Source: Eutreptiella sp. 'Long Island Sound 2002' (taxonomy: Eukaryota > Protista > Euglenida). From it: a stretch of 64,000 nucleotides of DNA. Under the pieces are notes generated by a model. That model was not told where the DNA came from. It saw nothing but the letters and a program-made list of their open reading frames with translations, and did no database searches. Where the stretch lies: assembly GCA_964036045.1 (NCBI GenBank), contig OZ038378.1, positions 11,656,001 through 11,720,000 of the forward strand. The letters run 5' to 3'. Position 1 is the stretch's first letter. Every line of letters begins with the position of its first letter. Of this stretch, positions 2-26,224 are shown piece after piece. The translations under genes were made by a program, and so were the position numbers.

Positions 2-532
2 GGCATCTACGCGCACCCTGACATCAGCATCTCTGCATATGTCCCGGTACACTTCCGGCAGACAAACAACACGGCAGAACTCTTGGCCGTGGTTCGGGCA
101 TTGCAAATCCTCTCTTTTGGTAAAGTCGCTATTTGCACAGACAGTGAGTACGTCTTCCTGGGAGCCACTGGCGCGGCGCGCCGGTGGAAACTCAGGGGAT
201 GGACGGGAAGCAGCGGTCCGGTTTCTAACGTTCCTCTCTGGGAACTTCTTCTGGACACCCTCAGTGCACACACAGGCTCCATCAAGTTTATTAAAGTGCC
301 GTCCCATGTGGACATTCTAGGGAACAACGAAGCTGATAGATTGGCTGAACAGGGAAGGCTCTCCCATCCCAGATGCCCTGTACTTAAGACCCCGTCGCGG
401 GACTTCATCATGCCCACGTACACCCCTCCCACCAAGCGACAGCGCAGGACCACTGTCGCCGAGCTGGATTCGATTGTGCAAGTTTTGAATTTTTCCCCTT
501 ACAAACACAGTATGGGAGGCAGTGTGGTATAG
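2..532 (+). CDS. RNase H (type I) domain, 5'-truncated by window edge; probably the C-terminal part of a retrotransposon pol
   Basis: Frame from nt 2 reads ...QTNNTAELLAVVRAL...ICTDSEYV...WKLRGW...NVPLW...KFIKVPSHVDILGNNEADRLA, the canonical RNase HI motifs (QTNNxAEL, TDS, WVxxH, GNExAD). Stop TAG at 530-532. Confidence 0.85.
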   Translation, partial: GIYAHPDISISAYVPVHFRQTNNTAELLAVVRALQILSFGKVAICTDSEYVFLGATGAARRWKLRGWTGSSGPVSNVPLWELLLDTLSAHTGSIKFIKVPSHVDILGNNEADRLAEQGRLSHPRCPVLKTPSRDFIMPTYTPPTKRQRRTTVAELDSIVQVLNFSPYKHSMGGSVV

Positions 533-6800: not shown

Positions 6801-8729
6801 ACTTTTAGGTATCTCCAAGTACAGTGTATCTGCGAAGAACAATCCGTGATGGTTGGGTACACGCCGCGTACGCGCTAATGGCCGTGGTACCTTGTTTCAG
6901 GCTTTCCAAAAGTTTCATGTTGAAAATGAACACCTCCACACTCCCTTTTCTCGTTCATTCCGCACACAATGTGTGTGGCGTCTCAATATGACAATCAAAT
7001 GCATACTCCAGCCCCCTCCCCATAAAAAATGGACCCAACAACAAAAGGCACTTTAAGTTTAACTTTCCCTCACCAAAACGATAAGAGACCCACTTCGGAA
7101 AAGTTCACTTTAAGAGCCACTTTGGCAGTGTTTTCGGGCACATGAGCAAACAAAATTGAACCCGAACAACCCAAAGCCCACGCCCTAAAATGACCAAACA
7201 ACGGCAACCAGGTGCTACAATACCGAACGCTGATGGTATTGCCCCATACAATTCCGAGAAATGGACCATCCGTCCGCGAGGGAAATAACCGGCGTTTGAA
7301 AAACAGCATGATTGACTATTTCATCCATGCATGAGATAATGCAGTGATGTCATGATGTCACCAAATGATGATGCCATCACCAACGAAGGAAGGTTTTATG
7401 GTAAAAAGTGAAAATCAATAAAAGTGGGCTCATTGCGTGCGGCTTGTTTTAGTGGGTTTGAAGACATATCACAACATTTTCAACGATTGAAATATAAGAG
7501 ACCTGGTACACTTTCAGAGACCCGTTGCTTTGGCTCCAGGTGAAAAAATTCGGAGACCCGGGTCTACTATCAAGGGGGGGGGGGGTGCACACTCAGCATA
7601 CCACGTACGCATGTACCAATCCGGTAGCCAAGTGAAAAAGGGTAACACCTGCACCTTATTTCGGCATTTGCCCCCCCCCCCCAAGTCTGGATGAAATAAA
7701 CCAAGGTTCCACCAAAAGCAAAAAAAATCGAAAAAAAAATCAGTTTAGCAAAAGGAGGGCGGGGGGGGCTCTTGGTATGCACACACGCTAACCCACGGTT
7801 TTTTGTTAGGAGGCGCATATGCATCAAGGAAGAGGCGCCAATGCACATACGGGTGAGGGGGGGGGGGGGATCGGGGCAACAAAATGGAAAATTATCTTGT
7901 CGCCCAATGTTTGGGGCGCAAATCATGATTCATTTGGAATTTTTTGATTTAGAGACAACAAAAATGTTCGGGCCATTCGGGCATACGCGCCTCTTTCTCA
8001 ATGCACGTGCCAGCCAACCGGTCTACAGAGAGGGTGCAAATCACCCAATGGGCGCAAGTCACCCAATTGGGCACGTCGCTGTCCTTTCCATCAACACCCT
8101 AGTCGGGGATTCTGCCTCTTGCATGCTGACAAGCACTCGGTGCTAATGCATCCAACTGGTGTTTATAGAATATGCATGCAGTCAACTTACACGAGCAATC
8201 AAGACCATGAAGCTCTGTTGCTCGTTTGTTGTGATGGTTGACCAATGTGGTCAAACGGAGGACAGTAATACCTATCCGGGATTCCGCTCACACGGACCTA
8301 TTGATATCTACCATCCTCGGGCTTTTCATTTGGGTATGGCCCGACGCTTGACGTTGGCCTCATCTTCACCCAAAAGAAAGACAATGAATTTAAACAACTT
8401 TTGTCCCCTTGCATTTGCATTTGTGCATCACATGACATTTGTTGTGGACATGGGATTCGGCCTCTTTTGCATGATAGAGGATCGGATCTTGCTAGTTCTG
8501 TGTTGGAGCATGTGCCATGCCATCTCCGTACCGACACCACACAACACCCACCCACGACACAAGAAGGTGCAAGAGGGAGCCGGGCCGTATGTTAACACCA
8601 ATAACGAAGTTGGGGAGGGAATTATATGGAGTTGAATCAGGCAAAATGCATTGAGGGTGCAAAGAGTGCACGCATGTTGACGTTCACTACAAGGCAAACA
8701 TCTGCTTTGTAGACGTATTTTTAGAATGA

Positions 8730-10958
8730 ATGGCTCAGCGGACGGCAACGCATGCCGAGATCGACGGTGCATACTTACACTACCATACCAAAGTCACTGT
8801 GTTGGCGGTGGGCGTCGAGGCTTACCTTTGCTCACGAGGTGCGGGCAACCCCTCTAGCGTTATCCAAGCGGAGGAGGCAACAAGCGATGCATTGCCACGG
8901 AATTTTGAGAGGTGCGTGTGGTCGATACTTCCCGTAGAGGGGTTGGCGCCAAACGAGAAGAGGTATGCAAAGTATGGAGACGTTGTTGTGCTGCAGCATG
9001 CCAAAACCAGCCGCCACGTTACAGTCTGCACATCCGTGCCCTCCGATGATGCACCCAATTGCTTTTCGGTTGATTTTGTGGCTGGGCAGCATTTGAGTCA
9101 TCCTGACAGATGCTTCAAGATACTCCCCAAATACAAGATTCGTCAAGAAGGGGAGTACATTCGTCTGAAGGACCAAGTGCTGTTTTGTTGCGAATCTTCG
9201 GGGCGCCGATACCTGAGCATTAATAAGGAGGAGTCCAAGACGAGCGCTGAAGAGCCCAGCCCCAACATCCACCAACCGCATGAAGTGCATTGCGCTCCCC
9301 ACCCGTTTGCGTGGCGTTTGCGCATTTACGACGACCCCACCATCGACCCGTCCCCCATTCGCGCTGGAAATTGTGTACTCTTGTACCACAAGGAGACGGA
9401 CGGTTTTCTCACAGCAGAATTAGCGCCTACAGCAGAAGTATACATGACGCCCGTTGAGCCCATGGAGGAGGTGAGTTCCGAGAGTGGAACTTCGTCGTCA
9501 TCTGCCAACGATGTGGAAGTGCTGGACGTCCCGGAGTTCGGCACTGTGTATCAGTCGATTACTGCGCCCAGCCGTGCGCGTACTGAGCCCACCCGTGCGC
9601 ACACTCCGTCACCGCAGTCGCTTTGGGACGTGAACGAGGCGCTACGGGAGGGCGAGTTGGACCTGGGGGGCGCGCGTGCGTCATTTCGAGCCAATTTCGC
9701 CGGCTTCCGGTTCGGGCGCACGCCGTCGTTCCCTCACGCCACGAGCCTCGACGTGGCGCGCCTCGCGGCGTTTGGGCGTCAAACCTCCGGCCCCGAGCTT
9801 GACGAGGAGACATTTGAGCAGCTCCGACGGGGCAGTGGTGCCGCGGGGACGCTCATGGCGTCGCAAGCCATGGCCGCAATTGCGCACCAGCCACATTTTT
9901 TGGGTGTTCCACCGAGCCCACAGGCACCGCCGCCGCAAGTGGGCCCCGCCGGAAGGTGGCGTCGCAAGCGCTCCGTCTCGCTGCCGCTGGCCCTGGCGGA
10001 CGCCAAGTTCAAGGCCAGCATCGACTTCCCGGCCGCGCTGGTGAACCCGACGCCATCCATCGGAGTGACGCCGGCCAGCCCCAGCCGGTTGCCCCTCGCA
10101 GTCGACCTGGACTTCCTTGAGGATGCGGAGGTGGATTTGGAGCTCCCGCGGGAGGACTCCAACTTTTTGGTAGAGACCATGCAAGAGTATGCCTCCGAGT
10201 TCCACACCCCGAAAACCGCCGGGACCCACGGGTCGAACGAGGTGTTCATGCTGCGGGCCACGGAGGACAGCGCGCGCGCGAACTCCATGTGGATCCTGGA
10301 GAACGCCAAGGCCAACTACGGCGGCAGCCCCCAGTTCGGCGTGGCCCACCGCCTGCGCCACGTCGCCAGCAGCTCGTACCTGACCGTCCTGCGCCACCCC
10401 GTGTTCGCCCACACGCTGCAGCTGGCGATTTCCTCCGACCCGGAGTGCCCCTCGGACAAGAACTCCCTGTTCATACTGTACCCTCTGGACGCCGATACCC
10501 ACGCCCTCACCTCCACGACGCCCGTGCAGCTGCAGCACCAGGCCTCCGGACTGTACGTCAAGCGTCCCGCGAACCTCCTCCACGTCCCGGACGCCCGGCG
10601 GCCCTCCCTCTTGGACTGCCCCATGCAGCTGCCCCTGGAGCTCTCCTACTTCACCGACGACGACGATGTGTTCACAATCCACGTCCCGAGCGCCAGCAAC
10701 ATGGAGGACGTGCACTTCGTCCTGGACAACATGGAGGCCCTCACGGCGTTCGTGGAGGTGTACCGCGGTGGGGCGGGCTCCGACGGCCACATCGCGACCG
10801 CCCAGGCGGGCCTCGAGCGCCTGATCCTCTTCTGCACCTCGAGCGAGGACCCGGACCCCCTGACCCGCCGTGGGGTGCCCATCGTGCCGCACCAACTGCT
10901 GCTCCTGGACACGCACGTGCACGTGCTGGTCATCCAGCTGCTCTCCGCGCCGTTCAAG
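8730..10958 (+). CDS. ITPR: IP3 receptor-family Ca2+-release channel, exon 1 (suppressor domain, MIR/beta-trefoil, start of RIH)
   Basis: RNFERCVW, KYGDVVVLQH, FKILPKYKIRQEGEYI, RLRHVASSSYL and LLSAPF match IP3R N-terminal motifs. Donor AAG|GTGTTG, phase 0. Confidence 0.9.
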
Positions 10959-11220
10959 GTGTTGGACTTGTGGTAGGCTCACGGGGTTTTCAGTGATGGT
11001 GCGGAAGACGTTCTGGGGCCGGGTCCGTCTCGGTACGATGAGTGGAGGGGGGTCTGAGAGGGCCTCTCAGCCCACAATAGTGGCCAACAGTGTACTCTTC
11101 GAGGTCGAACCCCTAAAGCATTCCCTGGTATACTCACAATGTGAACACATGATGCACATGTCTTTTCAATTCTCAGCCTGAGCTGGGATTCCTTGCCTTT
11201 TCCCCATGCGGGGGGGGGGG

Positions 11221-11483
11221 AACGACCCCCGCAACAACCAGCACAACCCCAATACGCCAACTACTGGGCGCCGCTGACGCGCACACGGCACATCCTGCCA
11301 CATCCAGCACAGCCCCGGCACACCAACTACTGGGCCGCGAACGCGGAAACGACACCAGCAGGAGCAACGGCCGCAGCGGCCCACAGAAAGCAGCGACCCG
11401 ACGCAACATGCGAAGGGAAGAACGTGTGACTGTCCAGGGCCCCGTAAAGAAACAACAACCAGACGGAATGTCACACAGGGGGG
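11221..11483 (+). mobile_element. SINE-like dispersed repeat copy in IP3R intron 1
   Basis: Closely matches the reverse complement of 61407-61670 (by eye). Contains the internal duplication CAACTACTGGGC and ends GGAATGTCACACAGGGGG. Confidence 0.8.
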
Positions 11484-11977
11484 TTGGTTGGCGCAGGGGT
11501 TGGTTTGGCGCGCCCGGGGTCAGTTTGCGTCAACATTTAGGACTCCGCGGCATTGAAATTTTCGTCGTTGGCGTGTGGTGAGCGATCCTTTCCCCTAAGC
11601 AGGTCGTGAGAGAGATGGGGCACCCCGACATTTTCTGCCGGTTGCGTTTAACGACCCTTTTTTGTAAACGTTGCCCTCTGGCCGGCGGTTCGTTTGTGAT
11701 TTTGGGTCAATCATCGTCGGTGGCGTGTCCAGCGCCGTTTGGTCCACCACCAACCGTCGAACAGCCGTTGGTGAAGTTTGCCTCAGTACTTTGCAATCGG
11801 TGCCTTAAGGTTCCATGGCACACAGGAGCGAGGAAGACCCAGTTGGGTGGTTCTGGAGGTTTGGGGTGTTGCACCTGCTGTGAATTCGGGCCAGGCAATG
11901 TGGGGTGGGGAATGTCGCCCAATCCCTATGGATTGCGAATGAGTTTTCAGGCCAATTACCCGTATTGCAACTGTCAG

Positions 11978-13105
11978 GAGTCCCAGGGCGCGGACGCCAT
12001 GTACACGCTAGGGGACCTCCAGCTGCCGGAGCACGCGGAGCTGAGCCGCCTGTGCGCCCTGGGCTACCGGCTGCTGCAGCAGATGGTTTACGGGAGTCCC
12101 GCCTTCGCGCTGAAGCTTGCGGAGTACATCCCGTTCATCCAGTCGCAGCTGGGCTACTGCCGTCTCGCAGCCGACACGCTGTCGTCCATGTTCCACAACA
12201 ACCGCAAACTGCTCGATGAGATGCCGGACCGGCTGGTGACGTGTTTCGTGCGCCTGTGCACTGTGCGCGTGCGGCAGGCCGGGTACATCAAGTTCCTGTG
12301 CGAGCTGTGCGTCTGCGACGGGCAGGGAGTGCTCAAGAACCAGACCGTGATCTGCAAGCACCTGCTGGAGGAGAACGGCGCGCTCCTCCTGCCGCTTGCG
12401 GTCCACGGGAACACCGTAGTGGTCAACATCCCGACAGACGAGCAGCTGCGGCTCGCCAAGCGCCGGAGCCGGGGCGGCAGCGGAGAGTTTCCAGCCCCTC
12501 CGACGCCGGTGAAGGCCGGGGCGGAGCGGCGTGCTTCGGTTGTGGGCGGCAAACCTGCCACGGAGAACTGGGTTTCGCTGGCCGTTTTTTATGAGACAGC
12601 ATCGCCGCGGGTGAAAGACTTCTTCGCTCAGACGCTGGAGCTTTTTGCGAAGCTGGCGGTTGGGGGGAACATGCGCACGCGCGACGTAGTGTCGAAGTTC
12701 GTGCCCAAGGAAGTGCTGGTGGCGGTCCTGGGCCTCGATGCGGTGCAGGAGGGCGTCCCCGACAGCGTGAAGTCACTGTTCTGGTCGATCGCCTCCGCCG
12801 TGTACCTGCACCGGCCGCTGCACCCGTCGACGGTGCTCGGGGTGCGCACGGCCGTGCGCGACTGCTCCCAACTCGAGGCGGGGCGGGCGCCCCGAAAGGC
12901 CGAGGGGCCTTCGAGCCCCCGGAGCCCTGCGAGCTCGAGCAGGAGCTCCGGAACCGGATCGGACACGCCAGGCTCCGACGAGCAGGAGGATTTGGCGGCC
13001 GACCAGGAGTTCCTTCGTGCGATGAAGGCGGCGGCCACGGATTACCTGCGGCAGAACCGGCAGCAGTACCTGAACCAGCCGTACCGCAGCATTCTGACAA
13101 AGCAG
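11978..13105 (+). CDS. ITPR: IP3R-like channel exon 2 (RIH domain)
   Basis: LCALGYRLL...FIQSQLGY...DTLSSMFHNNRKLLD, YIKFLCELCVCDGQGVLKNQTVIC. Acceptor CTGTCAG| (in-frame alternatives end at 11950 and 11986); donor CAG|GTCCTC. Confidence 0.88.
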
Positions 13106-13751
13106 GTCCTCAGGGGTGCACTCGGATGTGAGGAGCTGAGGAGGAGCCCCCCTTCTCCTGCGTTGGTAGCTGGCCGGTGTGAAATAAGTTTCGTCTACCA
13201 AAGGTTCCACCTGCACCTTCGCTTAGCGCACCTTAATTAGATCTTTACCCCCCACTTCCCTGCCACCCTGAAAAGGGAGGCCCCATGGCACAAGGGGATG
13301 TAGTTACATGCAATCGGCAAAAATTTTTCAGGTCAGGTTCGGCAGGTCCCGCTGGCAGACAGACAGTGCGGACAGCGCCCCCGGAAGATGAATCTTGTTG
13401 AACAAAGCCGTCCAGAAGCCTCAGGAACCGGGTCGTGGTTTTCTGCGCATTCCCGTGCAAACCCCTCGACCCTCCCTCCGAAGACAGGCCGTCTGCACGG
13501 TGGGCTGTCCCCCCCGATCCAGGAGCCTGAGTGCCGTGCTGGCCCTCAGTAGGCACGAGTGTGGGCAGATGCATGAAGCCTCAACTGCATCGCGTTGACT
13601 TGCTCTTTTGAGCTTACGCTTGACTGAATTGGCATGAGGCTGCAGTTGACTGGATTGCTCGGAGCACATGACAGTAGCACATGGTCGTGCCTGGCACCCA
13701 TTCCCCCACTCCCATTCCCCCCCTCCTCATCCTTCTATTGCATGTCCGCAG

Positions 13752-14927
13752 GTGATTCAGGTCTGGGATCAGATCATCCACTACTCCGAATGCACCGATG
13801 AGGAGCTGCACGACGTCGTGTTGATCCTACTGGAGCTGATGGACGGAACCTCGGACGTCATGGTGCCTGTCAAGACCGGGACGTCCCTGGGCCTCCTCAG
13901 CCACTTCCATGCCGCCGCACCGGAGGCCAACCGCTACGAGTTCTCCGAGTCGAACCTGTACATCATGGAGTGCAAGCTGGCGGTCTGCAAGCTGCTGTTG
14001 GTGATGCTGGACCTCCTGGCAGCGGAGGAACTGGACAAGATCATCTACAACTTCTTCGGCGCCGACCTCGCGGACCACGAGGAGCTGACCGGCGCGATGC
14101 TGGCCTCCCTTCGGGAGTCCAACAACAACGCCTTCTTCGTCGCGCTGCGGGAGCGGCTGCTGCCCATCCTGCGGCAGACCCTGCTGTACCAGCACAACGG
14201 CCTGGTGGCCACCGCGCTGTCCCTGCTCTTCCGGCTCAGCATGCTGAGGTCGGAGACCACTGCGCTGCTGCAGGAGACGCAGCTGCTCCATTCGCCGGAG
14301 ATGGTGCGCTTCTACCGCCGTGCGTGCCGGCACGCCGTGCGGCTGCAGAGCTTCTTCAACAACAAGAGCAACCTGAGAGGGCAGTGGTGCGAGACGATGC
14401 TGAAGGAGCTGCAGTGGTTCATGAACGAGGTCGCCGCCGGGCACTCGCTCGTGAAGATGGTGAAGCACGCGTCGGACCGCATGGTGGCGTGCCGCAGCTT
14501 GCACTACATCGCCCGCCGCTTCGAGCGCAAGAGCCGCTCCCTCGGCGCGTCGGCGGGGAGCATGGGGGAAATCCAGGCCCTCCTCCGCACCCTCAAGCTC
14601 CACCAGATCGCCATCAACATCCTGGAGGCGCTGGAGGGGATGCGCGACCAGGGCGCGGCGGCCAAGATGGCCCCCCCCTTGTATGACTTCTTGGTCGCGT
14701 TCTGCGCCAGGAACCCCCGGAACCAGCTGGCGCTGCACCACACCAAGGGCATGGACGTCATCGTGCGCGCCCTGCCCGAGAACCAGGGCGCCGACCGGCT
14801 GCTGTTCACCATGTTCGACGGCAACTACGAGCTGTGCGCGCGCAACAACCTCTACATCATCGAGGACCTGATCCAGATTCTGGGCGATCCCTTGACCGCG
14901 ACGCAGTCGTGCTTCCGGTGCCTCCAG
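13752..14927 (+). CDS. ITPR: IP3R-like channel exon 3 (armadillo/second RIH region)
   Basis: LLELMDG, IQALLRTLKLHQIAINIL, FLVAFCARNPRNQLAL, TMFDGNYELC. CCGCAG| acceptor, CAG|GTGTTT donor, GC-rich codon usage. Confidence 0.88.
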
Positions 14928-15022
14928 GTGTTTGTGGTGCATAAGTAATAATGTTTGGGGATCTGGTGGGTGGTGGCGCCTGTCGACGTGTGCGCCGGTG
15001 TCTCGCTGTAGATGGTCGCCGT

Positions 15023-15024
<2 letters not shown>

Positions 15025-15072
<48 letters not shown>
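15025..15072 (+). repeat. (GT)n microsatellite
   Basis: About 24 perfect GT units. Confidence 0.97.
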
Positions 15073-15073
<1 letters not shown>

Positions 15074-15123
15074 AGTGTTATATCACCATTGCTCTTCCAG
15101 TCTCCTGCTTGTCTGAGCGCCAA

Positions 15124-15561
15124 AATTTTCACTCCTCTGACGGACCGCTGGTGGTCCAATGGTAGCGCACCCGGTTTCAGATGTCCAGGCGTCGGTCCGA
15201 ATCCCGGTGTGCCGGTGACGTTCAAACGTCGGTTCAATCCCCGGTGTGCTGCCTTTTACCGCCGCCGGCGGCGGCGGCGACAAAGTGGGCAGACTGGGGT
15301 TCGAACCGGCGACTGCACATCTGGAACCGGCAGACCGGGATTCGAACCGACGCCTGCACATCTGCGTTACCACTCGGCCACTACCTGGATTTCGGTATAT
15401 GGCCTCCCTGCTGCTTGGGGGCGCATCTGCCACTGACAAAAAACCCAAACTGTGTGTATCTGTCTGACTGCCTGCTTGCTGGCTCAGGGACTGATTGGCT
15501 GACTGTCAACCTCTCTTCGAGGTGCACTGCCGAAGGCAATAGAATTTTCACTCCTCTGACG
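15124..15561. mobile_element. tRNA-derived foldback insertion flanked by 19-bp direct repeats
   Basis: AATTTTCACTCCTCTGACG at 15124-15142 and 15543-15561. Inside are two inverted tRNA-like arms (15149-15257 and 15281-15385). Confidence 0.7.
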
Positions 15562-16106
15562 AGGCTGCAGGAGGCAAGTACCCGCAGTGCCTATTCGTGC
15601 TCCCGCTGCATTTGCGTCCGCACTGGCTATCTCTTGGTTCTTGATTCCCAACACAAGTGTGTGCGTGTGCCGGGTTTCCTTTTCCAGCTCTTCATTCACG
15701 CTTCACTCCCCCGCTTTCCACAGTTATACTTAACCCGTGGCATTTCCTGCATTGTCTGCATCGGGTTCAGGTCCCTTCTTGTTTCCGGCCTGATGCACTG
15801 TTCATGGAATGTCGCCTTCACATAACTGACGCTGCCGGGAAGTTACTCGTGGTTCGAATGCAGCTCCATATCCAGCAAGTGCATAGGACGACTCCGCGTC
15901 TTCTCCCCTCACCGCGCCACCAATACAGCAAGCGCTTCGGTGACAATCCTGTACTCGATCCTGCTATTCCCTCTAACACACCTGTCCCCGAATCCGCCTG
16001 TGGAACGCGAGAGGAAGGGTGGACGCAATCATAGACACCCTTGTTCTTACTCCACCCACTGCTTTGCTTTCCTTGGCAACGGTTTCCCTCTGCGCTTGTC
16101 CCGCAG

Positions 16107-16913
16107 TGCCTGGCCGTGCCCCACTGGATCCCGGTGTACCGCAACCAGCAGCAGATCCTGCAGAGCCTTGTGTCCCACAGCTGCCTCCGGCGCCTGCACC
16201 GTCTGCACTCCCTCGACGACCCCCAGCGGCAGTGGCTCCTGGGCGTGATCGACCTCATCTGCACGTGCTGCGTGGGGCACTACGCCGACGTGCAGGCCGT
16301 GGCCCAGGGGCTGGTCCCGCTGCCGCTGCTGATCAAGCTGCTCGGCGACTTCCAGCACCTTCAGCGGCTGACGGAGCGGGCCCCGCTGCTGCGGTGCCTG
16401 TCGGAGGTGTGGTGGGCGTTTGCCTGGGTGAACACGGGCGTCGGTGAGGGGGAGGTGAAGTGGCTCGCGGAGACGAAGCACTGGTGGCCGCTGTGGTGGG
16501 AGGTGATGAAGAAGGTCCAGCAGCAGATCGCGGAATTCATGGGGCTGCCCCCCCACGACCAGCTCCTCGACCACTGCCACTACTTCCTGCGGTCGGTCGC
16601 GCCGTGTCTCGCGGGGTTCTTCGCGCTGTGCTGCGACACCAACCTCAACGACCTCCTCGACGGCCGCTGCCTCGGCACGGCGCACGCGATCGCGGCCGGG
16701 TTGGTCGTGATCGCGAACCAGTGCACCGTCCCGACCTCGGAGGACGTGGGGTACATGGAGGTGTTCCTGGAGACGATGGCGCGGGTCCTGACGGGCTTTG
16801 GGGACGAGCTTGGGGACCTCACGATCTGCGCCATCAACGACGAGGAGGAGGGGCGGCCCAGCCCCGCGGACGAGCTTGGGGCGCGGGGCGTTGTGCGAGG
16901 CCATGTGCTGCAG
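16107..16913 (+). CDS. ITPR: IP3R-like channel exon 4
   Basis: Joins FRCLQ|CLAVPHWIPVYRNQQQIL; YHIxLI-like HRLHSL...LIDLICTCCVG motif. In-frame phase 0 junctions. Confidence 0.8.
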
Positions 16914-17210
16914 GTGCCTCACGTGTCTGGGAGGAGGGTTTTCGCGGTGTTTCCCTGTGTACCGAACTCGTTGCGCTCTGTTGGGCGGCTGACCGCCCGT
17001 TCCTTGTTCGGAAGCGTCACCCGCCACGGGTCGCCCATGAAGCGTCGTTCATCAGCCGCCAACGGGAAGTGGTCATACGTCAACCGTCGTAGGGGGCTTG
17101 CAAACTGCTGCGAACTCGCAGGTGTCCAGTGCTTTGCAGAGTGAGCCTTTGCGTTCTCCAACGCCCGCAACGACCACACTTTTTCCCCCTCCAAACCATG
17201 TCCCGTGCAG

Positions 17211-17540
17211 GTGCTGGAGGCCGTGCAGTGCAAGAGCAAGGAGGAGTACCCCCCTGAGACCATCGACAACCTTGAGGACTTTGCGCTGCGCCTGCTCGGG
17301 GCAAAGGAGGATGGGGCGCCGGATGGGCCTTGCCTGGCGAAGTTCATGGCGCAGCTGACGGACGGGGAGCTGAGCCCGCAGGTGAAGGTGGCGCTGCTGC
17401 AGTGTTTCACGGTGTTCATCGACCGCTGCAAGCCCACGGGCCGTGAGCACACCGGCGTCGGGCAGCAGGCGGCGCTGAAGGAGGCGCAGGTGCAGATGGC
17501 GGCCGCCGGGGCCCCGCGGATGGTCGCGATTCTCGTGCAG
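17211..17540 (+). CDS. ITPR: IP3R-like channel exon 5
   Basis: GTGCAG| acceptor, CAG|GTAGTC donor. AQVQMAAAGAPRMV resembles the IP3R 'Q..LD.EGAS.LV' segment. Confidence 0.75.
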
Positions 17541-18096
17541 GTAGTCCGAGATGCTGCAGGGAGGGGTCCGCGGGGGGTAATGACGGGGTGTGGGAGGGAG
17601 TGGGGGTCTCCTCCGTGAGGGAGTGAGGGAGCGGCAAATGTGATGGGGTGTCGAAGGGGCTTTGCCCTCGGGAATGCAGCGGGAGGGGGGTCTCGGATCG
17701 GGCTGGGCCGCGGCTCTTGATCACTGGACGCCCCACTGGCCACACCACTCTCCTGAGGCTCCACCGTCCCTGGCGTAGCACAAGTGCGCCCGAACGTGCG
17801 GTCAGCAGTCCTGTCAGGTTGACGGCCGCCCCAGACCACACAGTCCAGCACCACCCGCCATGGGCACTGGTCCCCAGCGGCAATCAGCCCCGTCCCAACT
17901 GCCACACCCACTCGCTGCACCGCCAGAACTCCGCTCGAAATTGACGCATTGCGTGGATCACCTTGCCAAGGGCTGACCGGGCCCTCAACACCCGAGCGCA
18001 TTGGATCGCCTGCCATTTTCTGCCTCACCGACTCGCATGGGCAGCCCTACTGCATGACCACCACCACAGACGCCTCCTCCGTGATGCTCCGTGCAG

Positions 18097-18495
18097 GACT
18101 CGGACCGGGACGTGTTTGACGCGGTCGTGGCCTTCGCGACCAGCCTCTTCTGGGGCGGGAACGCCGTTGTCCAGGACTCGCTGGTCGCTACGCTGGAGGG
18201 CGACACCAAGAAGGCGTTCATCCGCACCTTCTCGGCCACGCTGCGGCAGGCGCTCATGTCGTTCAAGGACTGGAAGTCCGAGATGGCCTTCGTCCTCGCG
18301 AACTTCCCGGAGATGACATCGGACCTGCTGTTGGTGGAGAAGGCACGCACGGGCCTGCGGGCGACGACGGCGGTGCTGCGGTTCCTGCAGCTGCTGTGCG
18401 AAGGCCACCACCTGCCGCTTCAGGATTACTTGCGGGAGCAGCCCGGGGGCACGGCGGCCAACATCCCGAATGAAATCATGCAGTTCTTGGATGAG
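18097..18495 (+). CDS. ITPR: IP3R-like channel exon 6 (RIH-associated domain)
   Basis: LFWGGNAVVQDS, VLRFLQLLCEGHHLPLQDYLREQ (conserved Ca2+-site Glu). Confidence 0.9.
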
Positions 18496-19422
18496 GTGGG
18501 TGTTGTGCGTTTGTCTATGTGAGAGTCCGGACTGGAATGCGGAGTGGCGGAAGAGCCATGCGGGTTGGCTGCAGCCCCTTGTGGCCATGATGGGCTTCGC
18601 TCGGATTCTCTTTTTGTTTGCCGAGTGGCTGCTGAACGGGCCTTTTGTTTCCCCGACAGCCAGGGATTCTGGAGTGACGGAGTGGGCGTGTTGGCGTCTT
18701 GGTTGCACAAATGGATGCGGCGTTTTGGCCCATCCGGTTATTGCTGCGGGAAAAGCACACACGCGGCCTTTCTCCGTGGCAAGTTCCACGCTTCGTGGGG
18801 ACGACATTTCTGCGGCGCTGTTTTCGTAAAAATCGGTGGGGTCGGCCCTGGAAACGTCCAGAACGCCCGTGCCAGGTGCACAACAGGATCCCCTAAGTCT
18901 GCGGCTGTAAACACCGAATTTGCAGCGGGCGGCCAAGACGCTCTTGTGCGAACAACACAACGTCCTCCAGCCAAAAAAGAGAAAAACAACGCCAAGGAAC
19001 CAATTTGACTGTTTTTTCGCCAGCAACTTCCTTCCTTTATGGGCCACCCCTTCCCCAAAGATGTTGGCTCACAGGGGTCCTTTAGGAACCCCCTCTTTCT
19101 TCTTCTCCCCCATCATGACCCTGATCCCCCCCCCCTCTGCCCGCCGCTGCGCCCTGTACGCCATCGGCATTGGGGACGTGGCTTGTTGCATCCTTGAAGA
19201 ACAAAGAAGTGATAGTTTGTTGATGAGTTGCGATTGAGTGGGCCTTTTCTTTGTACCAAAGACAGCACTGCAAATGCTGTCAGCGGGCTTTTCCGAATAC
19301 CATCGCCAATCTGGGGCTTGAGAGGGTTGCGGCACCAGTGTTGTGGGAGTGTTTATCTGTCACCGGTTCTTGTTCTGTCTGGAAGGGCCGTAAAACGGGA
19401 CATGATTTCTCCGCTGCCGCAG

Positions 19423-20112
19423 GTCGTGGTCGGCGAGATGGACGAAAGCATCATCACCGTGGCCGTCCAGACATTCAACACGTTGACGGAGCTGTGCCAG
19501 GGACCGTGCGTGGGCAACCAGCAGGCGCTGGTGGCCTGCAACGTGACATCCCACGTGAACAAGGTGCTGCAGTCCGAGCTCAAGGACCGGGACCCGATGC
19601 TCGTGTTCGAGCTGCGGTGCGCAGCGACCCTCACGCTGCTGAGCCTCCTCGAGGGCTGCAACGACGCGTCGCGGCCGCTGTCGATGGTCAGCGCGATCGA
19701 TTTCGCGTCGATGCAGCGGACGCTGGACTCGCTATGGGACTTGGTCAAGGACACCATCAGCTCCGGGGTGCAGCTTACGGAGGACCAGCAGGCGCTGATG
19801 GAGTTCGCCTTCAATCTCTTCATTCTGATGTCGCAGCTTCGCGCGTTCAGCGACGACACGGGGCTGGTGACGGCGCTGGAGAGCTGCCGCGGGTACGAGT
19901 ACTTCCGGTCGCTGCTGGGCGTCGTGGAGATCGCACGGGGCGGCTACTTGGAGAAGGTGTACTTCCACATCCCCAACGTCTGCATGTACCTGACGAAGGA
20001 CCTCAAGAATGAGATTCTGTACTCCATCGACCGCAGCTCCCCCATCGCAAAGGTCACCTCGTTCCACGCCAATGCAACTGAGGTCGTTGCGCAGATCAAG
20101 TACCACCAACAG
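19423..20112 (+). CDS. ITPR: IP3R-like channel exon 7
   Basis: FNTLTELCQGPCVGNQ (Ca2+-sensor motif), LLSLLEG, VVEIARGGYLEKVYFHIPNVC. GC donor CAG|GCATGC is the in-frame join to exon 8. Confidence 0.88.
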
Positions 20113-21141
20113 GCATGCCCCCCCTTTTTGCCGGGGCTGTGCGGCGGGATGGGGTCGGGGATGGGGCCAACCTTCCCCAATCAGCGCCGGTCGACGTGCA
20201 CCGCTTTATGACAGCCACTCGACGTACACCCTTGCAGCCCCTTTCGGTCTCCTCCAGCGTCGTGCAGCGTCCCACGATTGCCTTGAATTGCCCTCAACAG
20301 ACCCTACGGGGGTGGGGAAACTGTCGTGGGAAACTTTCGGCTTTCAGACGGGTGCCGAAACTTCCCCCACGCAATTAGTTGCGCGACCAGGGCAACCCCC
20401 TTTGCCGGATTGCTGCTTTGGCATGCATTGTTCCCCAAATCATTTGGGCGTGCCGAGGTTTTCCCCTGCCGGAAGTTCCACACCCCTGTACAGTTCTCCC
20501 CTATTTCTTTCCGGTCTTCCTGGAGCTCAGCGCCGTTTTGGGGCGCACACTTGGCAATGGTGCGAAGGCTAAGCCCGCCAAACCCGGTGGATCTGGAGGT
20601 TTGTGGGTGCGGGTAGGGGGGGGGGGGTTGGTGAGAGACGGTGTGACGATGTCTGGGATGGACAGAACGGGGGTGGCAGAGCAAATGTACCGCAACACAC
20701 AATGCTCCCAAAGGGTGGGCCCCGTGTTGCCCCAAGAGACCAACAAAATTACCAGAACTGGACCATCAGCAGAAGTCGTTGGCAACGACGGCCCGAGAGC
20801 ACACGGCGGGTCCACCCACGTGCTCTCACGGCCCTCGTCCCCCACGGTACACGTAAGGCATCCAGGCCATTGCTGAGGGTGGCGGACACCCTAACCCCCC
20901 GGTGTGTGTGTGTGGGTGGGTCAGAGGCCAAGAAAAAGTGTGAGTACCCCGGCCTGAAATACCGGCCCCTTTAATGAATTTCATTTTCCCCCGAGGAAAA
21001 CTTTTCTGATGTGGGTGGGTGGGTGGGTCGGTCGGCCGGGGCTGTCACTAAGCAATGGCCTGAAGGCATCAGCCCCGCAGTCGCCGCTGGGCAGTGTTCT
21101 TCAGGCACTTCACCCGCCTGTGGTCCGTTTCCCACGTGCAG

Positions 21142-21544
21142 GTCACAAAGTGGTTGCAGGAGTTCTCCCCGCTCCCGGAGTTCTGCAAGGAATGGGCCTG
21201 GGTTGCAGCGTTCCGCACGTACGCCATCCACCACCGGGAGCGGCTGCGGGAGCACCTGCAGAACACCATCCTGGGCATCGCGGTGGTGATCAACGTCCTG
21301 ATGACCGGATTCCACAACCACCAGAGGCCCAGGGGGCACTACAGCCACGATTGGGCGCAGCTGGGCATCAGTGTGCTCGGGTGGTGCATGCTGCTGCTGA
21401 CCGCCCTCAACTGCGCGGTGTGGCTGTGCATCCACTACTTCACGTTGCAGCAAAGCTGGAGCATGCGCAGGGGCAACAAGGGCAACCTGCGCTTCCCCCT
21501 GCTCTCGTTTCTGTACACGCTGGTGCTGGCGCTCATGGCCGCAG
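21142..21544 (+). CDS. ITPR: IP3R-like channel exon 8 (N-terminal TM helices)
   Basis: Hydrophobic segments TILGIAVVINVLMT and LGISVLGWCMLLLTALNCAVWL. Phase 1 donor GCAG|GTGCTT. Confidence 0.8.
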
Positions 21545-21604
21545 GTGCTTTACGTTTCAAACATCCTGCCGATGGGAACCCCATATTTTCGGCCCCTCAG
21601 ACGT

Positions 21605-22576: not shown

Positions 22577-23052
22577 GCGGTGCGTTCCTCTCCCCGTTCT
22601 GGTTCGCCGGGCACCTGCTAATGATCGTGAACAAGAGCGTGCTGCTGCACATCGTCATCCGCTCGGTCCTGCTCAACGGCTGGAGCCTCCTGCTCACGGC
22701 CCTCCTGACCCTCATCGTCGTCTACCTCTTCATCATCATCGGGTACGTGTTCTTCGAAGAGGACTTTGTGGGCTCCGCGAACAGCCCCGGCGTGTGCGAC
22801 AGCCTCCTGGAGTGCTTCGCCTTCGGGCTCCTGGACGGTCTGCGGGCGGGCGGCGGCCTTGGGGACCTGCTGCCGCGGCGGGCGGGCGGGGGCAGCTTCC
22901 GGATCCTGTTCGACTTCGCGTTCTTCTTGATCATCGTCGTCATCATCCTCAACATCGTCTTCGGTATCATCATCGACACGTTTGCGCAGCTGCGGGACCA
23001 GAAGCACAGCATCGAGGAGGACACGAACAAGTACTGCATGATCTGCGGCCAG
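22577..23052 (+). CDS. ITPR: IP3R-like channel exon 9 (TM4-6, pore)
   Basis: CDSLLEC, GLRAGGGLGD pore, FDFAFFLIIVVIILNIVFGIIIDTFAQLRDQK, CMICG. GC donor CAG|GCGTGT. Confidence 0.95.
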
Positions 23053-23174
23053 GCGTGTCACTCTTGCCCCCTGTTCCTGTGCTGCGGCCCCGCAGATCGC
23101 CTTCCGAGTCTGGGGCTGTGCTGCCGCCCGGTTTGTGATGGGGGGACGTCTGAAGGGGGAGGACAGAAGAGGTA

Positions 23175-23290
23175 CCGCACAGAGCCACACAGAGCCAGAC
23201 AGCTACACATCGCCCCCTACAGCCGCACACAAAGCCACACAAAGCACACACAAGCACGTGGAGCCACGTGGAGCTTCACAGAGCCCCACA
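23175..23290 (+). repeat. GCCACACAGA-type ~10-bp minisatellite; related inverted copy at 40868-40985
   Basis: Repeated CACAGAGCCACAC units; the reverse complement is seen at 40.9 kb. Confidence 0.6.
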
Positions 23291-23409
23291 CTGGTGGCGG
23301 GTGGGTGGGTGCACGCGCACGTGGGTGCGGGCGGCGGATGGGTGTGGGTGTGGGAGGACTCCGTGGCTGGTTGGTTGGGTGGCGCGCGGTGGCGATAGTG
23401 GTCGGAGGT

Positions 23410-23781
23410 GATTGTTGTTGCGATTGATGCTGCTGCTGCTGCTGTTGTTGATTTTGTCATTTTCTTCGTGGTTGGCATTGTTGTTGTGTTTATCATCGCC
23501 GTAGTTGGTGTAGATATCTGCGTTTTTCGCAGTTGTTGTTGTTGTTGCTGTTGTTACCAGTAGTAAGCAAATACTCAGAGTTCTAGATGTCAATGGTTTC
23601 TATGCAATTTACAGAATCACCTCGAAGATTCATGGATTTTGCATTGCAAATCCATTTTGCACCCCTCCCCAACAAAACATAACAACGCCTCCGGCCTGCA
23701 ACAGCAACGGCAACAACAACAGCAGCAGCAGCAATACCAACACCAACACCACCACCAACAACGCCACCAACGCCACCAACG

Positions 23782-23845
<64 letters not shown>

Positions 23846-23859
23846 CCACAACCACAACC

Positions 23860-23908
<49 letters not shown>

Positions 23909-24330
23909 CCACAACCACAACCACAACAACAACAACAACAATAACACAGTGTTGTTCTTGTTACCATTGCTCTTGTGTTTGTTGCCGTTTTGCTTGTTGT
24001 CGTTGTCGTGGTTGTCGTCGTCTTGTTTGTCACTGTCGCTGTCATTGTTGTTTTTGTTGTCGTTATTGTCATCATTGCTGTCGTCTTTGTTGTTGTTGTT
24101 GTGATTGTGGTTGTGGTGCTGGTGGTGTTTGTAGTGTTTGTTGTCGCTGTTATTTTCCTTCGTTGTCGTTATTGTTGTTGTCGTTGTCCTCCTCCTCCTC
24201 CTCCCCCTCCTCATTGTTGTTGTTGACGTTGTTTGTGTTTGTCGTTGTTGTTGTCTTTGTTGTGGTCACGTTTCTTGTTGTCGTCGAAATCATCGCCGTT
24301 GTCGTTGTCGCAGTTGGTCCTGTTGTAGTT
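23410..24330. repeat. Compound (GTT)n/(CAA)n/(GTT)n trinucleotide satellite
   Basis: GTT-rich 23410-23560, CAA-rich 23690-23945, GTT/GTC-rich 23950-24330. Confidence 0.92.
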
Positions 24331-24424
24331 ATTGCTTTTTTCATTGTCGATGGCTTTGTCACTGCCGGTGCTGGTGCTGTTTGGGAGGTGCTTCTGGCAA
24401 AATTCCCACCCCTGTGGTCATCAG

Positions 24425-26224
24425 GACGCTAACGTGTTCGACCGCAGCGTCGAGGGCGGATTTGCTGGGCACGTCAAGGACACGCACAACATGTGGAACT
24501 ATTTGTATTTGATGGTGTATTTGAGCCACAAGCCCGACGACGAGTACACGGGACAAGAGTCCTATGTCAGTGCCAAATTGCAGATGCAGGACATGTCCTT
24601 TTTCCCCCTGAACAAGTCCATGGACCTGCAGGCGCTCGCAGAAGGAGAGCGCGCGACGCCCGACACGGCGGAGGAGGACGCTGCGCCGGGGCCGGCGTCG
24701 GAAAAGAACGCGTCGTCGATGACGTTGCCGCAGATCGTGATCCGCCGCGGGACCATTTGCCACAGCGAAGAGCTGGCGTTTGCGGAACGGGACGCGGGCG
24801 AGCTGCACGGCGTCGCCGATGAGATCCACGCCAAGGTGAAGCGACTGGAGTACAGCGTCGATGTCATGGGCGCCGACGTGACCGCGCGCCTCGACCGCGT
24901 GGAGTCGGCGCTGGGGGACACCGCACAGAAGACCGACGCCCACAAGGCGGACCTGCAGGCGATGGCCGGGCAGGTGGCGGCGCTGAACACGGCGCTGGTG
25001 GACATGCGGGACACGGCCGCGCACCGCATGGACACCCTCGAGGCGTCCGTGGGGCGGTTGGAGGCGATGCTGGCGGCCGCATTGGGGCCGCAGGGGCGAC
25101 CCAGCGCGAGCAATGGGCCGCTGCAGGCGGCCGCTGAGGCGACGGACGCCCCTGTGTTCGGGCGCACGGAGCCCGACGACGGCGATGCCGTTGCAGCCCG
25201 CGACCGTCGAGGGTCTGGCGCGGGAGGCCGTCGAGGGTCGGGTCCCTCGCGCAAACGGTCGGTGACGGACCCTGACACCGACGAGAGCTCTGATGTGCGA
25301 GCGGCCGTTTCAACGGGTGACAGTCGCGGTTTTGGTGCGGGAAACCGCCGAAATTCGGGTGCCCGACATGAGCGGGCGGTGATGGACCACGGCACAAACG
25401 GCGCTGTACGTTCCCGAAGCCCCGGTGCCGCACACGAAGGGCCCGCGCTGGACGACCACGCCGACACCAACGGGGCCGTATTCGAGGAGGACGGCGCCGG
25501 AGCGCGGGCCAACGGCGAGGACCCCGACGGGGCGGAGGCAGGCGCTGTGGCGCGGGGCCAGAGCGACAGCCCCTCACGGCCCCACGCCCCGGCGATGAAC
25601 GGCACAATCGGCAACGGCAGCGCCGCGCCGGAGCTCGGCATTGGCGCCGGCCTGGGGGTGCCCCCGGCCAAGCCCCGAACCCTTCCTAAAGGCGCGGGCG
25701 TTCTCCCGGCCGCCGCGGCCGCGAAACAGCCGCGCGCCTTTGTGCGGACAGCTGCGGCCGTGGCCGCCAACGACACCCCCACGAGCCTCCCCACTCCGCC
25801 CCACCCCGGCCGTGCCTCCAGCCCGAGCCCTGTGGCCTGTCCGCCGGTCGTCCCGGCGGTGCCCCGCCTTGCCTTGGGCAAATTGCAGCCCGCCCAACCG
25901 TCGCCAACCGTCGCGGAGTCTCGTTGCCGCTTACCGCAGGGCGCGTTCGCCACCACGCCGCGGTCCGCCGCAAGCGCCCTGACCCCGCGCTCCGACCCCT
26001 CTCCGACTCCGACCCCCCGGTCCTCGCGGTCGTCGCCCGCGCCCCTGTTCGTGGCCATCGACGGCTCCACCACACCGCGGGTGCTTGAGGGCGCCGCGGC
26101 ACTCTCGGAGCGCGCCCGCCTGCCTCTCCTGCCCGGCCATGGGGCTTGCACTGCGTCCCTAGAGGACTGTGCCCGTGGCGAACGCCGCGATGGAGGAGCG
26201 GCCTGGTGCGACGCGCAGCACTAG
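24425..26224 (+). CDS. ITPR: IP3R-like channel exon 10 (C2H2 linker, coiled coil, long disordered tail)
   Basis: FAGHVKDTHNMWNYLYL...EYTGQESYV...FFP, then an open frame to TAG at 26222-26224. Confidence 0.88.
   Translation, partial: DANVFDRSVEGGFAGHVKDTHNMWNYLYLMVYLSHKPDDEYTGQESYVSAKLQMQDMSFFPLNKSMDLQALAEGERATPDTAEEDAAPGPASEKNASSMTLPQIVIRRGTICHSEELAFAERDAGELHGVADEIHAKVKRLEYSVDVMGADVTARLDRVESALGDTAQKTDAHKADLQAMAGQVAALNTALVDMRDTAAHRMDTLEASVGRLEAMLAAALGPQGRPSASNGPLQAAAEATDAPVFGRTEPDDGDAVAARDRRGSGAGGRRGSGPSRKRSVTDPDTDESSDVRAAVSTGDSRGFGAGNRRNSGARHERAVMDHGTNGAVRSRSPGAAHEGPALDDHADTNGAVFEEDGAGARANGEDPDGAEAGAVARGQSDSPSRPHAPAMNGTIGNGSAAPELGIGAGLGVPPAKPRTLPKGAGVLPAAAAAKQPRAFVRTAAAVAANDTPTSLPTPPHPGRASSPSPVACPPVVPAVPRLALGKLQPAQPSPTVAESRCRLPQGAFATTPRSAASALTPRSDPSPTPTPRSSRSSPAPLFVAIDGSTTPRVLEGAAALSERARLPLLPGHGACTASLEDCARGERRDGGAAWCDAQH

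What the first reader, a model, noticed from the sequence alone, without database searches (positions are those of the whole stretch)
9370..12140. IP3-receptor homolog that appears to have lost its IP3-binding site
Seen in sequence: VLLYHKETDG, MLRATED, IVPHQLLLLD and QMVYGSPAF. These occupy the positions of mammalian IP3R1 VRLFHAEQEK, FLRTTGR, NRERQKLMRE and SQQDYRKNQ. Established, recalled from IP3R1 mutagenesis and structures: R241, K249, R265, T267, R269, R504, R506, K508, R511, Y567, R568 and K569 form the basic IP3 pocket. By-eye alignment keeps only the R265 and T267 equivalents. R269 becomes D, K508 and R511 become L, and Y567-R568-K569 become S-P-A. The Ca2+-site Glu motifs (LLCEGH, LTELCQGP), pore and C2H2 motifs remain. 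Inference: an intact Ca2+-release channel gated by something other than IP3.
Basis: partly seen in the sequence, partly recalled or inferred. Interest (0 to 1): 0.78.

Follow-up and report, generated by a model that had tools for sequence, protein, structure and literature searches.

The report
Euglenid IP3-receptor-like calcium release channel
A multi-exon gene of a euglenid alga encodes an apparently intact calcium-release channel of the IP3-receptor/ryanodine-receptor family that lacks the textbook IP3-contact residues. All its euglenozoan relatives lack them too, including the trypanosome receptor that is reported to respond to IP3, so this is an ordinary new member of a known divergent group.

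Summary
All four peptides are at the stated places, inside a roughly 11-exon gene on the + strand (8730 to 26224, about 3,160 aa). Its Pfam domains run in the IP3-receptor order.

HMMER and MAFFT alignments put V/H/L/L at R504/R506/K508/R511 and S-P-A at Y567/R568/K569. R241 and K249 become L and G. Only the R265 equivalent may survive, and that depends on the alignment.

The Ca2+-sensor residues, the GGLGD filter, the S6 gate and the C2H2 finger are all kept.

The inference "gated by something other than IP3" is not established, for three reasons:
- **Clade-wide state:** the same residues are missing from Euglena gracilis transcripts, diplonemids, Bodo and the Trypanosoma brucei IP3 receptor.
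- **Tree position:** this gene sits in a clade that is sister to the clade holding the T. brucei receptor.
- **Published precedent:** trypanosome receptors are reported as IP3-activated despite poor conservation of these residues.

The roughly 270-aa in-frame insert in the ligand-binding beta-trefoil looks coding and is predicted disordered. The site is an insertion hotspot in this clade.

No RNA reads were available, so exon structure and expression rest on homology. An earlier scan note reports the same loss on another piece of this genome.

Verdict: a new member of a known kind, of low to moderate interest.

The parts
8730..10958 (+). Exon 1: start codon, beta-trefoil 1, beta-trefoil 2 with the insert, and the first helices of ARM1 (743 aa).
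   Evidence: Open frame with Pfam Ins145_P3_rec and MIR. It ends at aag|GT and joins exon 2 exactly as the intron-less relative P0003 reads through. The AlphaFold model matches the IP3R and RyR N-terminal domains.
9375..9404 (+). VLLYHKETDG. This is the strand that carries R241 and K249 in IP3R1; here they are L and G.
9438..10241 (+). In-frame insert of about 268 codons in beta-trefoil 2. It is predicted disordered apart from a conserved helix near its end, and it is flanked by the look-alike motifs AEVYM and NEVFM.
   Evidence: It has no stop codon. GC by codon position over 9420-10238 is 0.67/0.54/0.75, against a flat 0.57/0.60/0.57 in introns. pLDDT is below 50 for residues 255-474. Its last ~30 aa are conserved in the paralog P0002. 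The transcript-derived E. gracilis protein P0009 has the same His-to-Trp spacing, 299 against 300 aa.
10248..10268 (+). MLRATED. This is the candidate equivalent of FLRTTGR (R265-R269). The Arg may correspond to R265; the R269 position is acidic.
   Evidence: Searches support this alignment; searches give the alternative.
10881..10910 (+). IVPHQLLLLD. This is the ARM1 helix that carries R504, R506, K508 and R511 in IP3R1; here they are V, H, L and L.
10959..11974 (+). Intron 1 (GT..AG, 1016 nt). It holds a hugely multicopy repeat at about 11221-11484.
11975..13105 (+). Exon 2: the rest of ARM1, with the RIH domain.
   Evidence: Pfam RIH 1.7e-20. IP3R1 is hit at 7e-19.
12080..12106 (+). QMVYGSPAF. 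Y567/R568/K569 of IP3R1 are S-P-A here.
   Evidence: Ungapped HMMER alignment and the multiple alignments.
13752..14927 (+). Exon 3 (ARM2 region). The start is well supported; the end is chosen by GC3 and a cagGT donor.
16155..16889 (+). Exon 4. Both ends are approximate.
   Evidence: tblastn hits of relatives; GC3 of 0.95 falls after about 16875; in-phase sites.
17211..17540 (+). Exon 5. The start is approximate; the end is at cagGT.
18097..18495 (+). Exon 6. It holds LLCEGH (18391-18408), the equivalent of the rat IP3R1 E1978 Ca2+-sensor glutamate.
   Evidence: The alignment reaches E1978 in 3jav numbering.
19423..20148 (+). Exon 7 (RIH_assoc). It holds LTELCQGP (19483-19506), the equivalent of E2042. 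The end is approximate.
21094..21591 (+). Exon holding the first transmembrane helices. Both ends are approximate and the junctions are not resolved.
   Evidence: Open frame with GC3 of 0.76 and hydrophobic stretches. Sequence similarity to relatives is weak.
22591..23052 (+). Pore exon: S5, the P-loop with filter GGLGD (22852-22866), the S6 gate motif and C-M-I-C (23035-23046). The start is approximate.
   Evidence: Pfam Ion_trans 1.4e-15. RyR2 is hit at 3e-30 and IP3R at 1.4e-28.
23053..24424 (+). Intron 8 (GC..AG, 1372 nt), with (CAA)83 and (TTG)n arrays.
   Evidence: The spacing between C-x2-C and H-x4-H then equals that of E. gracilis P0019.
24425..26224 (+). Last exon: H-V-K-D-T-H (24470-24487); EYTGQESYV (24542-24568) with the sensor Thr equivalent of rat T2657; and a long C-terminal tail running to the stop codon.
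   Evidence: GC3 of 0.8-0.98 runs through most of the tail.

Best explanation
Shown: this is a roughly 11-exon gene of a euglenid that encodes a protein of about 3,160 aa from the IP3-receptor/ryanodine-receptor superfamily. It has IP3R-type architecture: two beta-trefoils, ARM repeats with RIH and RIH_assoc, a six-helix pore domain and a C2H2 linker, with no SPRY or RyR repeats. It belongs to a euglenid-diplonemid subclade that is sister to the kinetoplastid clade holding the T. brucei IP3 receptor. Like that whole group, it lacks the basic and aromatic residues that clamp IP3 in animal receptors. It also carries a 270-aa disordered insert in the trefoil loop region that holds R265-R269 in animals. 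Inferred: it works as a tetrameric intracellular Ca2+-release channel opened by cytosolic Ca2+ at the conserved sensor (Glu in LLCEGH, Glu in LTELCQGP, Thr in EYTGQ), that is, by Ca2+-induced Ca2+ release. The N-terminal domain would act as a regulatory module that does not bind IP3 in the canonical way. Open: whether IP3 still acts on it through a non-canonical site, as is reported for trypanosome receptors.
For: Family and architecture: Pfam hits. The profile of the N-terminal domain hits IP3R1 at 4.8e-121 and RyR2 at 1e-63. The AlphaFold model scores Foldseek 2e-25 to IP3R3, and VIA Z 28.8 to IP3R and 29.7 to RyR2. Contacts missing. Ca2+ sensor and pore kept. The sensor residues rE1978, rE2042 and rT2657 are functionally defined in PMC9522344. 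Intactness: the provisional spliced coding sequence is open (2,242 + 166 + 753 aa) and exon GC3 is 0.8-1.0 against about 0.55 in introns. Clade: IQ-TREE gives 96 SH-aLRT for the 6-row subclade and 99 for the 18-row euglenozoan group; names are. Points that make this copy look even less IP3-competent than its kin: K508 is L here, whereas E. gracilis t792 and t26 keep R. Also, the K/R conserved in most of the clade two residues before the S-P-A triplet (MV[KR]G) is Y here.
Against: No RNA reads, so expression and several exon borders are not shown. The T. brucei receptor lacks the same residues yet is reported as IP3-activated (PMC9694693, PMC6027440), so missing residues do not prove IP3 insensitivity. 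A scan note reports an intact PI-PLC in the same genome (s1-210122, not checked here), so IP3 can probably be made. Conservation of the sensor does not guarantee Ca2+ regulation; PMC9522344 notes that the Capsaspora receptor is not regulated by Ca2+ as the mammalian receptor is. One Arg (R509, or R516) may still sit near the old pocket.
Confidence: 0.5

Rival explanations
1. It is a true IP3-gated channel that binds IP3 through a non-canonical pocket, like the acidocalcisomal IP3 receptors of trypanosomes.
For: It lies in a clade sister to the TbIP3R clade. TbIP3R lacks the same residues, yet TbIP3R and TcIP3R release Ca2+ in response to IP3 in IP3R-null DT40 cells according to PMC6027440 and PMC9694693. 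An Arg conserved across the clade sits in the T-R-x-G-x-P motif just before the ARM1 helix. R509 may be equivalent to R265. A PI-PLC is noted in this genome (s1-210122, unchecked).
Against: It is a paralog, not an ortholog, of TbIP3R. It lacks even the partial basic residues that some euglenid paralogs keep. Several paralogs exist in euglenids, which leaves room for division of labour. No binding data exist for any euglenid protein in the papers searched.
Confidence: 0.35
2. It is a decaying or mis-assembled gene copy, not a working channel.
For: No RNA evidence. Introns are full of repeats. Three junctions around the transmembrane exon are unresolved. The helix-turn-helix arm of trefoil 1 that the paralog has is missing.
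Against: All conserved blocks are in open frames with consistent cagGT/cAG splice sites. Codon-position GC bias is strong in every exon. Functional residues are intact. Four DNA runs of one study agree with the window without differences; they may include the data the window was assembled from, so this is weak support.
Confidence: 0.07
3. It is a ryanodine receptor in the strict sense.
For: The pore exon aligns contiguously and slightly better to RyR2 (3e-30) than to IP3R (1.4e-28, in two stretches). The N-terminal fold ties with RyR2 in VIA.
Against: No SPRY or RyR-repeat domains were found in any exon. The length is about 3,160 aa, not about 5,000. The N-terminal profile is far closer to IP3R than to RyR. 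No RyR-sized relative is among the best 150 hits.
Confidence: 0.03

Closest known systems
Trypanosoma brucei / T. cruzi IP3 receptors (TbIP3R Tb927.8.2770 = P0144/P0152; TcIP3R)
   Same: Same superfamily and architecture, and the same euglenozoan group in the tree. The same canonical IP3 contacts are absent (P/H/H/V and A-P-E). There is also an insert at the same trefoil loop, with a 141-aa His-to-Trp spacing. The Ca2+ sensor, pore and zinc finger are kept.
   Different: It is a paralogous subclade, not an ortholog, with at most about 32% identity to any relative. The insert is longer (300-aa spacing). IP3 response and localisation are untested here, whereas the trypanosome proteins are reported as IP3-activated and acidocalcisomal (PMC6027440, PMC9799330).
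Animal IP3 receptors (ITPR1-3; PDB 3UJ0, 3T8S, 1N4K, 7T3P)
   Same: Same domain order, N-terminal fold, E1978/E2042/T2657 sensor equivalents, GGxGD filter and C2H2 linker.
   Different: 10-12 of the 12 listed IP3 contacts are not conserved. There is a 270-aa disordered insert in beta-trefoil 2. The S5-P loop is short. The suppressor-domain arm helices are missing.
Euglena gracilis transcripts EG_transcript_60, _26 and _792 (EukProt EP00667)
   Same: These are the nearest named relatives. They also lack the canonical contacts. Transcript_60 carries an insert of the same size at the same site.
   Different: Identity is only about 25-33% over the aligned exons, so they are paralogs or come from another species. 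None has been characterised.
Oomycete IP3R-like channels
   Same: They are published as IP3R homologs with poor conservation of the IP3-binding-core residues and unknown gating (PMC9694693).
   Different: They are from a different supergroup and were not compared by sequence here.
Paramecium CRC families and Capsaspora IP3R-B (recalled from memory: Ladenburger/Plattner; Alzayady et al. 2015)
   Same: They are protist IP3R/RyR-like channels, of which some subfamilies lack IP3-binding residues.
   Different: They were not tested here. The papers are not held and no labelled sequences were in the hit list.

Membership tests
IP3R/RyR superfamily of intracellular Ca2+-release channels | N-terminal double beta-trefoil plus ARM, RIH and RIH_assoc domains, and a C-terminal six-helix pore with a GGxGD filter | tested here: met
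   Pfam PF08709, PF02815, PF01365, PF08454 and PF00520. GGLGD is at 22852-22866. The fold matches.
IP3R/RyR superfamily of intracellular Ca2+-release channels | Cytosolic Ca2+-sensor residues (rat IP3R1 E1978, E2042, T2657) | tested here: met
   The HMMER alignments place Glu at both positions. The Thr is in EYTGQESYV. Residues are as defined in PMC9522344.
Canonical (animal-type) IP3 receptor | Basic/aromatic IP3 contacts R265, R269, R504, K508, R511, Y567, R568, K569 | tested here: not met
   V/H/L/L at 504/506/508/511 and S-P-A at 567-569. R269 is acidic or Pro. R265 is R or T, depending on the alignment.
Canonical (animal-type) IP3 receptor | IP3 binding and IP3-evoked channel opening | not testable with these tools
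   This needs a binding assay and expression in IP3R-null cells.
Canonical (animal-type) IP3 receptor | IP3R domain order without SPRY or RyR repeats, size about 2,500-3,200 aa | tested here: met
   There are no SPRY or RyR hits in any exon. The provisional protein is about 3,160 aa.
Ryanodine receptor | SPRY domains, RyR repeats, about 5,000 aa | tested here: not met
   The N-terminal profile scores IP3R 4.8e-121 against RyR 1e-63.
Euglenozoan IP3R-like group (holds TbIP3R) | Falls on the euglenozoan side of the tree split, away from the animal, chytrid and heterolobosean sequences | tested here: met
   The 18|15 split has 99 SH-aLRT, and the subclade with E. gracilis and D. japonicum has 96; FastTree agrees. 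No RyR outgroup was included and the root is unknown.
Euglenozoan IP3R-like group (holds TbIP3R) | Shared sequence signature P-[IV]-x-x-[HNF]-Q in place of P-N-R-E-R-Q-K, and M-[VI]-[KR]-G-[SN] in place of S-Q-Q-D-Y | tested here: met
   The exception is Y in place of the K/R in this gene.

The most novel reading that the evidence does not exclude
The euglenid-diplonemid subclade to which this gene belongs is a set of IP3-insensitive release channels. They would be opened by Ca2+ alone or by another ligand. In them the former IP3 loop of beta-trefoil 2 has been turned into a long disordered regulatory insert, for instance a phosphorylation or partner-binding platform. Euglenids would then run several differently gated IP3R-like channels side by side.
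Probability: 0.4. Interest if true: 0.45.

Novelty: new member of a known kind. Interest (0 to 1): 0.27.

Why it matters
It adds an uncharacterised euglenid branch to the IP3R/RyR family. It also shows that absence of the animal IP3 pocket is the ancestral state of the whole euglenozoan group rather than a recent loss. That sharpens an existing question: how do trypanosome receptors respond to IP3 without the canonical residues, and do their free-living relatives do the same? A euglenid protein that can be expressed beside TbIP3R would be a useful comparison. In itself the gene is an expected family member and changes no current view.

Tried and rejected
- **RNA evidence:** the run search found only DNA runs of one study. 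The laid contigs are colinear with the genome and show no splice joints. The gene model therefore rests on homology, GC3 and splice motifs.
- **Insert as a hidden in-frame intron (GAA|GTATAC ... GAG|GTG, 804 nt):** rejected as the less likely reading. It is stop-free, it has coding-type GC periodicity, its end is conserved in the paralog, and a transcript-derived E. gracilis relative has an equal-sized insert. It is not disproved without RNA.
- **Word search with exon 1:** it returned only the window's own protein and one paralog, so the large profile search was used.
- **E. gracilis ortholog:** no near-identical full-length protein exists in the 1.84-billion-protein library. The species is therefore not the E. 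gracilis of EukProt, or the gene is not in that transcriptome. A further word search was not spent on this.
- **R265-R269 columns in the large multiple alignments:** unreliable because of the variable loop. I used anchors, a profile test and two AlphaFold models instead, and the result stays ambiguous.
- **phmmer of TbIP3R residues 600-1000 against the PDB:** blank. TbIP3R residues come from two independent MAFFT alignments.
- **Papers not held:** Huang 2013, Potapenko 2019 and Alzayady 2015. Their content is cited only through reviews that are held.
- **Other limits:** pocket electrostatics could not be computed because model coordinates are not exposed. The junctions around the transmembrane exon (about 20150-22590) were not resolved.
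Full report
**What is there**

The + strand from 8730 to 26224 carries a chain of long open frames separated by repeat-rich stretches. The pieces hit Pfam as follows:
- Ins145_P3_rec at 3e-20 and MIR in 8730-10973
- RIH at 1.7e-20 in 11606-13237
- RIH_assoc in 18085-18519 and in 19228-20208
- Ion_trans at 1.4e-15 in 22555-23424

No SPRY or RyR-repeat domain was found in any piece.

**Gene model**

Relatives map to nine blocks in three frames.

Intron 1 is fixed exactly. The relative P0003 reads through the junction without an intron. The window gives the same peptide if 10959-11974 (GT..AG) is removed.

Introns 2, 5b, 6 and 8 were placed by scoring all in-phase GT/GC..AG pairs against relatives. 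The donors share cagGT and the acceptors cAG. Intron 8 is GC..AG, and its removal restores the exact C-x2-C to H-x4-H spacing of E. gracilis P0019.

The ends of exons 3, 4 and 5 were set by the sharp fall of third-position GC (0.9-1.0 in exons, about 0.55 in introns) and by in-phase sites. The three junctions around the first transmembrane exon remain open.

The provisional coding sequence has no stop codon and gives about 3,160 aa.

No RNA run holds the locus. The four holders are DNA runs of one study and are colinear with the window. Expression and the exact exon borders are therefore inferred, not shown.

**Organism and relatives**

The window's contig and that of a 44%-identical paralog (P0002) belong to one ENA assembly.

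A profile search of 1.84 billion representative proteins gave 424 hits. The nearest named ones are:
- Euglena gracilis transcripts 792, 60 and 26
- diplonemids (Diplonema, Flectonema)
- Bodo and Apiculatamorpha
- the Trypanosoma brucei IP3 receptor (P0144, 3,099 aa)

This fits the earlier scan note that the genome is a euglenid.

In an IQ-TREE tree of 33 full-length proteins the gene sits in a 6-row subclade with E. gracilis t60 and t26, D. japonicum and two unnamed proteins (96 SH-aLRT). That subclade is sister to a 12-row kinetoplastid-rich clade holding TbIP3R. The 18-row group is split from the animal, chytrid and Willaertia sequences with 99 support. FastTree agrees. The root is unknown and no RyR was included.

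**The IP3 site**

Pairwise HMMER against solved IP3R1 gives the following substitutions:

| IP3R1 residue | This protein |
|---|---|
| R241 | L |
| K249 | G |
| R504 | V |
| R506 | H |
| K508 | L |
| R511 | L |
| Y567 / R568 / K569 | S / P / A |

The last three come from an ungapped 34-residue match. Two MAFFT alignments give the same columns.

The R265-R269 loop is the one uncertain place. The protein has two look-alike motifs, AEVYM before the roughly 270-aa insert and NEVFM after it.
- **Pre-insert motif as the strand (R265 -> T):** pairwise HMMER and the AlphaFold model of this protein (strand 236-241 at pLDDT about 86; residues 503-513 modelled as a helix at 61-84).
the model of the paralog and the insert-bearing relatives that have no hydrophobic strand before their insert. 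A profile of 42 short-loop relatives leans the same way only slightly (76.4 against 74.5 bits).

In both cases the R269 position is not basic. So 10 to 12 of the 12 listed contacts are not conserved.

**Why this does not show a switch of ligand**

The same columns read P/H/H/V and A-P-E in TbIP3R. They are non-canonical in every euglenid, diplonemid and kinetoplastid sequence examined. Among 65 long relatives only the two animal sequences keep all seven contacts at 504-511 and 567-569, and three others keep them in part.

[quoted passage not shown] Another review summarises the DT40-null-cell experiments for TbIP3R and TcIP3R (PMC6027440).

The missing residues are thus an old, clade-wide state and are compatible with IP3 gating in at least one sister lineage.

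On the other side, this copy is a paralog of TbIP3R. It lacks even the Arg that E. gracilis t792 and t26 keep at K508. It also has Tyr where most of the clade has a conserved Lys or Arg two residues before the S-P-A triplet.

**What is conserved**

- LLCEGH aligns to rat E1978 and LTELCQGP to E2042.
- EYTGQESYV keeps the sensor Thr. These three residues are the functionally defined Ca2+-activation site shared by IP3Rs and RyRs (PMC9522344).
- The pore exon hits RyR2 at 3e-30 in one stretch and IP3R at 1.4e-28 in two stretches. This reflects a short, RyR-like S5-P loop.
- The S6 F...I gate motif and the C2H2 finger are present.
- The N-terminal family profile is far closer to IP3R1 (4.8e-121) than to RyR2 (1e-63). 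At fold level the two tie: Foldseek gives 2e-25 against 1e-18, and VIA gives Z 28.8 against 29.7.

**The insert**

The 268 codons at 9438-10241 are stop-free and show coding-type GC periodicity over 9420-10238. They end in a helix conserved in the paralog and are otherwise predicted disordered.

The His244-to-Trp282 spacing varies as follows:

| Protein | Spacing (aa) |
|---|---|
| Animal IP3Rs | 37 |
| TbIP3R | 141 |
| E. gracilis transcript_60 (transcript-derived) | 299 |
| This gene | 300 |

The loop is an insertion hotspot in Euglenozoa, and the insert is most likely translated.

**Reading**

The best-supported explanation is an intact tetrameric intracellular Ca2+-release channel, activated by Ca2+ at the conserved sensor, whose N-terminal domain cannot bind IP3 the animal way. 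Whether IP3 still acts on it is open. I put about 0.5 on no IP3 gating and 0.35 on non-canonical IP3 gating.

No paper in the library treats a Euglena IP3 receptor. A scan note reports the same loss on another piece of this genome, and another reports an intact PI-PLC. Neither was checked here.

**Verdict**

This is a new member of a known kind of divergent protist IP3R-like channel, of low to moderate interest.

Noticed in passing
window 11221-11484 (intron 1); also L001 13890-14441: An extremely multicopy repeat. Contig word depth is 1e4 to 1e6, against about 14-50 in the flanks, in all four DNA runs, with many variant joints. A copy lies in the matching intron of the paralog.
   Followed up: partly
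window 13193-13222: A second multicopy edge at the start of intron 2 (depth about 600-2,000), where many contigs end or join to 11464-11482.
   Followed up: no
window 9432-9446 and 10236-10250: The disordered insert is flanked by look-alike motifs (AEVYM and NEVFM, 9 of 12 bases identical). The paralog P0002 has ATVATVL and AAQVQLL at the same two places. AlphaFold picks the first as the trefoil strand in this protein and the second in the paralog. This may be a trace of how the insert arose (a duplication).
   Followed up: partly
window 23053-24424: Intron 8 has a GC donor (ccagGCGTGT), unlike the other resolved introns. It holds (CAA)83 at 23699-23946 and a (TTG)n / 12-mer array at 23979-24187.
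   Followed up: partly
window 15025-15072: A perfect (GT)24 microsatellite in intron 3, next to the element at 15124-15561 that another scan note flags as tRNA-derived. ARAGORN finds no tRNA in 8000-27000.
   Followed up: partly
window 8930-8960 (residues about 68-80 of exon 1): This copy lacks the helix-turn-helix arm of beta-trefoil 1. The paralog P0002 has it (helix 72-83 in its model) and so does animal IP3R1. The loop is about 19 aa shorter than in the paralog.
   Followed up: partly
window 22591-23052: The pore exon has a short S5-P loop and aligns in one piece to RyRs but in two pieces to IP3Rs. The protein thus mixes an IP3R-like N-terminus with a RyR-like pore loop.
   Followed up: partly
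window 24800-26224: A C-terminal tail of about 470 aa follows the conserved linker. It is Ala/Pro/Ser-rich with a coiled-coil-like stretch near its start, still has high GC3, and has no Pfam hit.
   Followed up: no
L001 20518-20991 and window 26-448: An RNase_H-bearing open frame next to the paralog matches the start of the window at 35% identity. This is probably a retroelement family shared by both contigs.
   Followed up: no
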